NCBI RefSeq assembly: GCF_001194135.2
Contig: NC_068986.1
Location: 91,389,360-91,453,359 of the forward strand
Reading direction: 5' to 3'
From: Octopus bimaculoides
Taxonomy: Eukaryota
Length of the DNA: 64,000 nucleotides
Under the pieces are notes generated by a model. It did no database searches, was not told the origin of the DNA, and saw only the letters and a list, made by a program, of their open reading frames with translations. The position numbers and the translations under genes are program-made. Positions 49,319 to 50,299 of the stretch are shown piece after piece (position 1 is the first letter of the stretch; each line of letters begins with the position of its first letter).

Positions 49319-49816
49319 GTCATCTCCCTTTCTTTCATCATTCCCCTGTCTACTGAATTATTATTTCTATTTTGTTGTTCTTCACCCCTTTTCAAACTGT
49401 CATCACCTGTATCCCTGCCTTCCCCAAACTCATATGTATCATCAATCACCCCTTCACCTTGTCTACCATTCACTACATCCATCCCTTAAATCTGCTCAAT
49501 ATCTACGGTCATTCCCTACCCACTCTTCCTATCTCCCTTCCAATGTATATCGTCAACCACTTCTCAACCATAGTTTTTTATTCATTATACTCGCTTCCTC
49601 ATCCATTCCTCATCTCTAACCATCCCTCACTAACCCCTTACACTTTTGCACCCTCTACACACACACATATCCCCCATACTTCTGTTCCCATTTCTCTTTA
49701 CATTCTACCTCGAGGGTCCACTCTGAACACCTCATAACTGCTATTTTATTTTCATTCCAATTTCACCCAAGTGATTCCAGTCTTCTCTTCTAAAATGTGA
49801 GTAACCATGTAGTTTC

Positions 49817-50051
49817 TTATTTCTTTATTGCCCGCAAGGGGCTAAACATAGAGGGGACAAACAAGGACAAACAAAGGGGTTATGTCGATTACATCGACCC
49901 CAGTGTGTATCTGGTACTTAAATTATCGACCCCCGAAAAGATGAAAGGCAAAGTTGACCTTGGCGGAATTTGAACTCAGAACGTAACGGCAGATGAAATA
50001 CCGCTAAGCATCTTGTCCGGCATGCTAACATTTCTGCCAGCTCGCCGCCTT
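49817..50051 (-). mobile_element. SINE-B (tail type i), full length, fused to the 3' end of the U6 copy
   Basis: Head AAGGCGGCGAGCTGGCAGAAATGTTAGC, B-box-like GAGTTCAAATTCC, tail ...GCGGGCAATAAAGAAATAAG. TSD CATGTAGTTT at 49806-49815 and 50160-50169 encloses SINE plus U6. Confidence 0.9.
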
Positions 50052-50159
50052 AAAAAATATGGAATGCTTCACGAATTTACTTGTTATCCTTGCGCAGGGG
50101 CCATGATAATCTTTTCTGTATCGTTCCAATTTTAGTATATGTACTGCCAAAGCAAGTAC
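50052..50159 (-). pseudogene. U6: U6 spliceosomal snRNA, full-length (108 nt) retro-pseudogene
   Basis: Reverse complement reads GTACTTGCTTTGGCAGTACATATACTAAAATTGGAACGATACAGAAAAGATTATCATGGCCCCTGCGCAAGGATAACAAGTAAATTCGTGAAGCATTCCATATTTTTT, colinear with metazoan U6. The ACAGAGA box is mutated to ACAGAAA and the catalytic AGC triad to ATC. No convincing upstream TATA/PSE. Confidence 0.95.
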
Positions 50160-50299
50160 CATGTAGTTTATACACAGCAAATAACCTGTTCTGGCCCCTT
50201 CTTTAATACTTAAACCTCTCACCTCCTAGTATAAAGTTGCCTCTCTCTCTACTGTAACTCATTAACTTGAAGGGGATCTTAGTTTTGAGGGCTACATGG

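What the first reader, a model, noticed from the sequence alone, without database searches (positions are those of the whole stretch)
49806..50169. U6 snRNA-SINE chimeric retrocopy: full-length U6 fused to a full-length SINE inside one target-site duplication
Seen: on the minus strand a complete U6 (50159-50052, ending TTTTTT) runs with no spacer into the first bases of a complete SINE-B (AAGGCGGCGAGCTGG...) and its tail. One 10-bp direct repeat CATGTAGTTT (49806-49815, 50160-50169) brackets the whole unit, with 2 extra nt of microhomology at the U6 5' junction. No separate TSD flanks the SINE alone, so both RNAs appear to have been copied in a single target-primed event. Established: U6/L1 chimeric pseudogenes occur in mammals and are attributed to RtcB-type ligation of U6 (cyclic-phosphate end) to a 5'-OH RNA, or to template switching. 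Inference: the 3' partner here is a non-autonomous SINE with an intact 5' end (expected 5'-triphosphate), which fits end-to-end template jumping by a non-L1 RT better than ligation. I do not know of this being described in a mollusc, but cannot search to confirm.
Basis: partly seen in the sequence, partly recalled or inferred. Interest (0 to 1): 0.8.

Follow-up and report, generated by a model that had tools for sequence, protein, structure and literature searches.

The report
U6–SINE chimeric retrocopy, one insertion
A dead copy of the U6 spliceosomal RNA is fused head-to-tail to a complete SINE and both were pasted into an older repeat in a single retrotransposition event; it is real, but it belongs to a kind of chimera already described in vertebrates, so it matters mainly as a possible first invertebrate example.

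Summary
Rfam finds a full-length U6 at 50053-50159(-), 101 bits against a threshold of 44. Its T6 run ends at 50052 and abuts the first base (50051) of a full-length 236-nt SINE, 49816-50051(-). About 20 SINE copies or fragments lie in the window.

- **One target-site duplication (TSD).** One 10-bp repeat (CATGTAGTTT, present only twice in the window) brackets the whole unit, with 2 nt of GT microhomology. Neither half has a repeat of its own.
- **Empty site.** A paralogous, uninterrupted copy of the host repeat (27415-27679) aligns straight across the site.
- **Age.** The two halves are about equally decayed: at least 6/107 for U6, 16/235 for the SINE.
- **U6 is dead.** ACAGAGA reads ACAGAAA and AGC reads ATC, and there is no promoter.

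A single-event chimeric retrocopy is well supported (about 0.9). I favour a template jump (0.55) over RtcB-type ligation (0.3), because the SINE 5' end is intact. One locus cannot decide this.

It is not a new kind. TSD-flanked U6/SINE chimeras made by non-L1 LINEs are published for platypus (Mon-1) and Anolis (AnolisSINE2). I found no invertebrate report. I could not verify the source taxon or obtain other copies or orthologous loci. Verdict: new member of a known kind, interest 0.35.

The parts
50160..50169 (-). 5' copy of the target-site duplication (AAACTACATG in element orientation; CATGTAGTTT on + strand)
   Evidence: Exact 10-mer found only twice in the window. It abuts U6 position 1.
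50052..50159 (-). Full-length U6 snRNA retrocopy (108 nt including a T6 run at 50057-50052). It is dead: ACAGAGA>ACAGAAA, AGC>ATC, plus at least 4 more changes at conserved positions.
   Evidence: Rfam RF00026, 101.4 bits, model positions 1-105 of 105. The sequence was read directly.
50051..50052 (-). U6/SINE junction: last T of the U6 oligo-T run joined directly to the first A of the SINE (…ATATTTTTT|AAGGCGGCG…), with no spacer
   Evidence: The family 5' end A(A)AGG is defined by the TSDs of other copies.
49816..50051 (-). Full-length SINE (subfamily A, 236 nt) with A-box-like and B-box-like motifs and the tail ...GGGCAATAAAGAAATAAG. It is 6.8% diverged from the subfamily consensus.
   Evidence: BLAST against the window and alignments.
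49806..49815 (-). 3' copy of the target-site duplication. The next two bases (GT, 49805-49804) repeat the first two bases of U6 (microhomology).
49775..50401 (-). Older host repeat ('repeat X') into which the unit inserted. The two halves, 50170-50401 and 49775-49805 plus one TSD copy, are contiguous in a paralogue.
   Evidence: The joined flanks align without interruption to 27415-27679.
27415..27679 (+). Paralogous uninterrupted copy of repeat X, used as an 'empty site' proxy
   Evidence: 68% identity over 290 columns, running straight across the insertion point. About 27 of the 29 bases just 3' of the site are identical.

Best explanation
This is a chimeric retro-pseudogene made in one target-primed reverse transcription (TPRT) event.

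- Priming: the endonuclease/reverse transcriptase of the LINE that normally mobilises this SINE family nicked the bottom strand of an older repeat at 5'-GTTT^ATAC-3'. It primed on the SINE RNA's AAATAAG-type tail, with an AAA/TTT overlap between tail and target.
- Copying: it copied the SINE RNA to its natural 5' end.
- The join: instead of finishing, the RT continued on the 3' oligo-U end of a mature U6 snRNA (end-to-end template jump) and copied it to its first nucleotide. The jump may have been helped by non-templated A's on the cDNA pairing with the U-tail.
- Integration: the cDNA end was joined to the target through 2 nt (GT) of microhomology. Repair produced the 10-bp duplication.

The product is inert. 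The U6 part has no promoter and carries mutations in the catalytic ACAGAGA and AGC motifs. The internal T6 run would stop Pol III.

Shown: the anatomy, the single TSD, the empty site, the equal decay and the family-typical junctions. Inferred: the order of copying, the identity of the enzyme, and that the join was a template jump rather than a prior RNA ligation.

Confidence that this was a single event is about 0.9. Confidence that the join was a template jump is 0.55.
For: - Full-length U6 directly abuts a full-length SINE in the same orientation.
- One 10(+2)-bp TSD surrounds both halves, and none surrounds either half. The chance of such a repeat is about 0.1%.
- A paralogous copy of the host repeat is contiguous across the site.
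- The TSD length (10 bp) falls within the family range of 7-18 bp. Its AAAC start matches the tail/target overlap seen at c23343 and c45489, so integration was primed on the SINE tail as in ordinary family members.
- The halves are similarly diverged: SINE 16/235 = 6.8%; U6 at least 6/107 at positions conserved in the Rfam model.
- Chance adjacency is negligible. There are 11 full-length SINE 5' ends in about 60 kb, giving roughly 1e-4 per base and strand.
- For a jump specifically: the SINE 5' end is the family's native end, hence presumably 5'-triphosphate. Replacing 5'-OH by 5'-triphosphate dramatically reduced RtcB ligation (PMC6789731).
- Ordinary copies carry 1-4 extra nucleotides at the 5' junction, including TTT at c45489. 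This fits non-templated addition of mainly A's by non-LTR RTs, which is a prerequisite for jumping (PMC8857657).
- U6/SINE chimeras in platypus and Anolis were attributed to template switching by stringent LINEs (PMC4476161).
Against: - There is only one locus, so a junction at the exact SINE 5' end could be coincidence.
- For human U6/L1 chimeras, experiments favour RNA ligation before reverse transcription (PMC6789731).
- The R2 RT study notes that overhangs of 3 nt or more are unproductive for jumping in vitro, and that human chimeras arise by pre-ligation.
- The 5' chemistry of this SINE's RNA is unknown.
- The partner LINE was not found in the window, so 'non-L1' rests on the tail alone.
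- No orthologous locus, raw reads or other genomic copies could be examined.
Confidence: 0.55

Rival explanations
1. RNA ligation first: mature U6 ending in a 2',3'-cyclic phosphate was ligated by RtcB (or another RNA ligase) to a SINE RNA with a 5'-OH. The chimeric RNA was then retrotransposed in one TPRT event through the SINE tail.
For: This is the experimentally supported route for human U6/L1 chimeras, and U6 can also be ligated to non-L1 RNAs (PMC6789731). It predicts the same DNA product: one TSD, complete U6 ending in its U-run, and no spacer. RtcB is reported as highly conserved.
Against: The SINE part starts at the family's native 5' end. A primary Pol III transcript has a 5'-triphosphate, which strongly reduced ligation. 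In extracts, ligation products were mostly joined to 5'-truncated partners after endonucleolytic processing.
Confidence: 0.3
2. Co-transcript or composite family: a source locus with a SINE sitting immediately downstream of a U6 gene produced a read-through RNA, or an established U6-headed composite element exists. This copy would be one of many with the same junction.
For: Composites with a shared junction do exist in this genome. Two loci (about 17225-17566 and 57364-57660) carry the same SINE-tail-to-SINE-position-18 join, at 87% identity across it. snRNA-headed SINE families (SINEU) exist in vertebrates (PMC4494074).
Against: Only one U6 lies among about 20 SINE copies in the window. The T6 run between the halves is a Pol III terminator. 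Animal U6 promoters lie upstream and would not be carried along (established knowledge; describes snRNA promoters as upstream elements). No flank or TSD remnant lies between the U6 T-run and the SINE start.
Confidence: 0.07
3. Two independent events or an artefact: the SINE inserted first and U6 cDNA was later captured exactly at its 5' boundary (for example during break repair), or the junction is an assembly error.
For: The assembly is a gapped scaffold with 15 N runs, and SINEs are repeats that can confuse assemblers. No reads were available.
Against: Neither half has a TSD of its own, and U6 lacks any tail of its own. The two outer flanks belong to one contiguous repeat copy, as shown by the paralogue, so both ends of the unit are correctly linked. 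The nearest gaps are at 41229-41962 and 56243-56513, far from the site. An exact zero-spacer abutment by chance is about 1e-4. The halves are equally decayed.
Confidence: 0.05

Closest known systems
U6/SINE chimeric pseudogenes of platypus (U6/Mon-1, L2-mobilised) and Anolis carolinensis (six U6/AnolisSINE2) - 'Group IV' snRNA copies of Doucet et al. 2015 (PMC4476161)
   Same: U6 is fused in sense orientation to a non-autonomous SINE that carries the tail of a non-L1 LINE. The whole unit is flanked by one TSD and there is no poly(A). Those cases were interpreted as template switching during TPRT.
   Different: Those cases are vertebrate, and that survey stopped at amphibians. In platypus most U6 parts of the U6-L2 chimeras are 5'-truncated and TSDs are 1-9 bp, whereas here U6 is complete and the TSD is 10 bp. 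Whether their SINE parts are full length is not stated in the text or in the supplements held.
Human/mammalian U6/L1 chimeric pseudogenes (Buzdin 2002; Garcia-Perez 2007; Moldovan 2019, PMC6789731)
   Same: A full-length U6 ending in its U-run is joined directly to a retroelement, with a single TSD.
   Different: In those the partner is a variably 5'-truncated L1 with poly(A), and the RT is L1 ORF2p. Formation was shown to proceed largely by RtcB ligation to 5'-OH ends. Here the partner is an untruncated Pol III SINE with a non-poly(A) tail.
Fungal chimeric retrogenes (WEIRD-MGL 'MINE', WEIRD-MgSINE, tripartite WEIRD-MgSINE-MGL) in Magnaporthe (PMC2104539)
   Same: A cellular non-coding RNA is fused 5' to a SINE or LINE inside one 10-20 bp TSD, outside mammals, and is attributed to template switches.
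   Different: The 5' partner is not U6, and the Mg-SINE parts are 5'-truncated.
SINEU (U1/U2-headed SINE families; Kojima 2015, PMC4494074) and 5' additions to mollusc SINE heads (Matetovici 2016, PMC4758252)
   Same: An snRNA or other sequence is added 5' of a SINE body.
   Different: Those are amplifying multi-copy families. Here there is a single copy, a U6 head without an internal promoter, and an internal T6 terminator. There is no evidence of amplification.

Membership tests
U6 spliceosomal RNA (Rfam RF00026) - sequence family | Full-length match to the covariance model above the gathering score | tested here: met
   101.4 bits against a gathering score of 44, model 1-105/105
Functional U6 gene | Intact catalytic ACAGAGA box and AGC triad | tested here: not met
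   ACAGAAA and ATC in the Rfam alignment
Functional U6 gene | Own upstream promoter context (PSE/TATA at about -55/-30) | tested here: not met
   The upstream sequence is the body of an unrelated repeat that continues on the other side of the insertion. The only TATAAA lies at -14 to -9.
U6 chimeric retro-pseudogene (Doucet 'Group IV' / Buzdin chimeric retrogenes) | U6 fused in sense, without spacer, to the 5' side of a LINE/SINE/retro-transcript that carries the priming tail | tested here: met
U6 chimeric retro-pseudogene (Doucet 'Group IV' / Buzdin chimeric retrogenes) | One target-site duplication encloses both parts; none around either part | tested here: met
   10+2 bp around the unit, 0 bp around each half
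U6 chimeric retro-pseudogene (Doucet 'Group IV' / Buzdin chimeric retrogenes) | Empty pre-insertion site demonstrable | tested here: met
   Paralogous empty site only. An orthologous site was not obtainable.
tRNA-derived (Pol III type 2) SINE | Multi-copy, short, each copy with its own TSD | tested here: met
   About 20 copies or fragments; TSDs of 7-18 bp, different at each locus
tRNA-derived (Pol III type 2) SINE | tRNA-related head with A and B boxes | tested here: inconclusive
   A-box-like TGGCAGAATCG and B-box-like GAGTTCAAATTCC are read in the consensus. ARAGORN finds no tRNA, and Rfam tRNA gives no match at E<=10.
tRNA-derived (Pol III type 2) SINE | 3' tail shared with a partner LINE | not testable with these tools
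   No LINE 3' end with this tail is present in the window, and no genome access was available.
CORE-SINE superfamily (which includes the octopus OR1/OR2 SINEs) | Central CORE domain similar to MIR | tested here: not met
The score of 17 equals the shuffle mean of 16.9. This is a weak test because the reference came from memory.
Amplifying snRNA-headed SINE family (SINEU-like) | Many copies sharing the same head/body junction | not testable with these tools
   One copy in 64 kb. The public collections searched hold no DNA of this genome.

The most novel reading that the evidence does not exclude
U6-SINE chimeras may be recurrent in this (putatively cephalopod) genome and may always keep the SINE's native, presumably 5'-triphosphate, end. 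That would show an RtcB-independent, end-to-end template-jump route to U6 chimeras that is conserved from vertebrates to lophotrochozoans. It would also offer a natural system in which jump and ligation can be separated. A further possibility is that such a composite has seeded a U6-headed repeat family.
Probability: 0.15. Interest if true: 0.6.

Novelty: new member of a known kind. Interest (0 to 1): 0.35.

Why it matters
U6 chimeras record what LINE reverse transcriptases do at the end of a template. Whether they arise by template jumping or by prior RNA ligation is still debated. A TSD-flanked chimera whose 3' partner is an untruncated Pol III SINE with a non-poly(A) tail is the configuration least easily explained by RtcB ligation. 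If the source is indeed a mollusc, it extends the phenomenon beyond vertebrates and suggests it is a general property of animal non-LTR retrotransposition. A single decayed, non-functional locus has no consequence for the host. Its value is as a pointer to a genome-wide census that could settle the mechanism.

Tried and rejected
1. Other junction copies through the protein index. The 65-aa ORF that reads through flank, U6, junction and SINE head (50025-50222, -) has no indexed relative.
2. Direct DNA scans for a U6-3'/SINE-5' junction. Metagenome contigs and genome contigs gave 0 hits. A SINE-only pattern also gave 0 hits in metagenome contigs, so these collections hold no DNA of this genome and the absence is uninformative.
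3. Same or orthologous locus through the unique 121-aa ORF 70 bp from the TSD: not on record.
4. Taxon check and more genome DNA through TE proteins.
   - The LINE-like fragment at 34036-34272 had no relatives.
   - Pfam found nothing in 8 fragments.
   - A retroelement C-terminal fragment at about 32 kb hit 9 ENA/Logan proteins at 48-58% identity.
   - Six fetched loci (123 kb) contain neither the SINE, nor U6, nor the flanks, so they come from unrelated organisms.
5. No credible exon is present in the window, so no gene-anchored orthologue retrieval was possible.
6. SINE sequence strings were not found in any paper text.
7. The idea that this is a CORE-SINE was rejected.
8. tRNA detection in the SINE head was negative.
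9. The supplements of Doucet 2015 held as text do not mention the SINE partners.
10. The weak 'U4' match at 50086-50104(+) is just the complement of the U4-pairing region of U6 (11 bits, E=5). It is not a feature.

Full report
**Observation.** Rfam places a complete U6 snRNA on the minus strand at 50053-50159. It scores 101.4 bits against a gathering score of 44 and covers model positions 1-105 of 105 (repeated). The next base (50052) is a sixth T. Base 50051 is the first A of AAGGCGGCGAGCTGG..., the start of a SINE that runs to ...GGGCAATAAAGAAATAAG at 49816. The 10-mer CATGTAGTTT occurs exactly twice in the 64 kb, at 49806 and 50160. These positions lie immediately outside the SINE tail and immediately outside U6 position 1. 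With the GT shared by the U6 5' end and the 3' flank, the repeat is 12 bp.

**The SINE family.** BLAST of the SINE part finds about 20 copies or fragments in the window. Alignments with flanks show two subfamilies that share the first 170 nt or so and differ in the 3' part. Each copy's own TSD defines the ends.
- c24687: ATATGTTCTA.
- c23343: GAAACTGGAAG.
- c45489: GAAACAAGTGAGGGTTG.
- c61659: ATATAATTTTAGAT.
- c13379: ACACAGC.
- c55618: GTATTTAATGCATTTTTC.
- c49095: ATATGTCATCTCCC.
- c11155: about 15 bp.
- c52529: ATTACTAT.

The family begins A(A)AGG. Subfamily A ends ...AAAGAAATAAG, with no poly(A). The focal SINE is therefore complete at both ends. The 10-mer is not part of its consensus, and a 10-bp TSD lies inside the family range of 7-18 bp. 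Three subfamily-A insertions, the focal one included, have TSDs that start (G)AAAC, overlapping the AAATAAG-type tail. This is what priming of the SINE tail on a TTT-3' target end would give. Several ordinary copies have 1-4 extra nucleotides between the TSD and the SINE start (TTT, AATT, CC, C).

**One insertion, not two.**
- In 20,000 random placements of a 344-bp element, only 24 (0.12%) had a flanking exact repeat of 10 bp or more, even allowing +/-3 nt of slop.
- No repeat of 5 bp or more flanks U6 alone or the SINE alone.
- I joined the two outer flanks with one TSD copy and searched the window. Positions 169-441 of that construct align without interruption to 27415-27679, at 68% identity over 290 columns. 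About 27 of the 29 bases just 3' of the site are identical.
- So the unit sits inside an older repeat, and a paralogous copy of that repeat shows the site uninterrupted.
- This also ties the two ends of the unit to one locus, which argues against an assembly artefact. The nearest N runs are 41229-41962 and 56243-56513.
- The window has 11 full-length SINE 5' ends in about 60 kb. An exact same-strand abutment by chance is therefore of the order of 1e-4.

**Age and state.** The focal SINE differs from a consensus built from the other subfamily-A copies at 16 of 235 positions (6.8%). The other copies range from 3.4% to 9.4%. The U6 half differs at a minimum of 6 of 107 positions that are conserved in the Rfam model, including ACAGAGA>ACAGAAA and AGC>ATC. 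The two halves are thus about equally decayed, as co-insertion predicts. The U6 is dead, and its upstream sequence is the body of the host repeat rather than a U6 promoter.

**Mechanism.** Shown: the anatomy above. Inferred, in order:
1. The LINE machinery that serves this SINE nicked the bottom strand at GTTT^ATAC and primed on the SINE tail.
2. It copied the SINE RNA to its native 5' end.
3. Synthesis continued on the 3' oligo-U end of mature U6, up to U6 nucleotide 1.
4. The cDNA end was joined to the target through GT microhomology, which gave the 10-bp TSD.

For step 3 I prefer an end-to-end template jump, for three reasons.
- The SINE keeps its native 5' end, presumably a triphosphate. 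RtcB ligation needs a 5'-OH and is dramatically reduced by a 5'-triphosphate. In extracts, ligated partners were mostly 5'-truncated (PMC6789731).
- Non-LTR RTs add non-templated nucleotides, predominantly A's, and this addition is a prerequisite for jumping (PMC8857657). In sense orientation such A's read as T's, as at c45489. Such A's could also pair with a U-tail; this last point is my inference.
- The published U6/SINE chimeras made by stringent LINEs were interpreted as template switching (PMC4476161).

Against this, experiments on human U6/L1 favour ligation. The R2 RT paper itself notes that long overhangs are unproductive in vitro and that human chimeras arise by pre-ligation. One locus cannot discriminate.

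**Rivals.**
- Ligation before TPRT (0.3) gives the same DNA product.
- A read-through transcript or a spreading composite family (0.07) cannot be excluded without the genome. Two loci in this window share an identical SINE-tail-to-SINE-position-18 junction, so composites can be multi-copy here. However, the T6 run is a Pol III terminator, a U6 head brings no internal promoter, and no flank remnant separates the halves.
- Sequential insertion or an artefact (0.05) is contradicted by the TSD pattern, the paralogous site and the equal decay.

**Comparison with what is known.** U6/L1 chimeras are classical. Doucet et al. 2015 extended them to non-L1 clades and to SINE partners: U6/Mon-1 in platypus and six U6/AnolisSINE2 in lizard. 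These are TSD-flanked and were attributed to template switching by stringent LINEs. That survey covered vertebrates only. Fungal WEIRD-MgSINE chimeras show the same logic without U6. Searches of the held literature found no U6 chimera reported from an invertebrate. The library is incomplete, so this is weak evidence of absence. The locus meets every tested defining feature of a U6 chimeric retro-pseudogene. It is a new member of a known kind, not a new kind.

**Limits.**
- I could not verify that the window is from a cephalopod. It has no exon, and its TE protein fragments have only distant relatives, in unrelated assemblies.
- The abundance of SINEs and microsatellites and the 35% GC content are compatible with published descriptions of octopus genomes (PMC12988792). 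That is not a test.
- No other genomic copy, orthologous locus or read data could be reached.
- The partner LINE is not in the window.

**Verdict.** The join was most likely a template jump (0.55), less likely a ligation (0.3). Novelty: new member of a known kind. Interest: 0.35. It is worth a genome-wide census, which could turn one anecdote into a test of jump against ligation.

Noticed in passing
window 17225-17566 (-) and 57364-57660 (-): Two loci share the same SINE-SINE junction. A subfamily-A tail (...AAAGAAATAAG) is joined directly to a second SINE that starts at its position ~18 (AAACGTTAGCATG...). Identity is 87% over 238 bp across the junction. This is a dimeric composite SINE family, or a recurrent join through AGAAA microhomology.
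   Followed up: partly
window 45489-45721 (-), 52529-52695 (-), 49095-49264 (+), 11155-11305 (+): Ordinary SINE copies carry 1-4 extra nucleotides (TTT, AATT, CC, C) between the 5' TSD and the SINE start. This looks like a footprint of non-templated addition at the end of reverse transcription.
   Followed up: partly
window 61659-61923 (-) and 49095-49264 (+): There are internal rearrangements within SINE copies. c61659 has a 32-bp tandem duplication of the GGGGTCGAT...GCACT segment. c49095 has an expanded G run (GCGGGGGGGGGGGGG) and a 5-bp deletion in the head.
   Followed up: no
window ~49775-50401, 27415-27679, and fragments near 1545, 7131, 9357, 29198, 30322, 40431, 40883, 56121: An abundant older repeat ('repeat X') hosts the U6-SINE insertion. 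Its conserved part reads ...CCTTCCTAATGCCAACCACTTT... and translates as LPNANHFTEC in one frame. It was not classified.
   Followed up: partly
window ~31000-32700 (-): Two neighbouring decayed copies of a retroelement C-terminal region (...KILWDFPIQ...RPDI...PIIIGA...LGTARI...) are present. The relatives found are 48-58% identical proteins on large contigs of ENA assemblies ERZ25067570, ERZ25042219, ERZ25067561 and ERZ25073825. Those contigs lack this window's SINE.
   Followed up: partly
window, 15 N runs (e.g. 991-1339, 17568-18197, 41229-41962, 56243-56513): Many assembly gaps are bordered by di- or tri-nucleotide microsatellites ((TG)n, (TA)n and the like). This marks a short-read scaffold, and copy counts of repeats in the window are therefore lower bounds.
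   Followed up: no
window 34036-34272 (-), 3051-3284 (+), 63113-63412 (+): There are LINE-like ORF fragments (for example ...LRWTGHLIRMKDSRIPKQ...). They have no Pfam hit, and none lies next to a SINE-tail match, so none can be named as the SINE's partner. The one fragment also searched against the protein index (34036-34272) had no relative.
   Followed up: partly
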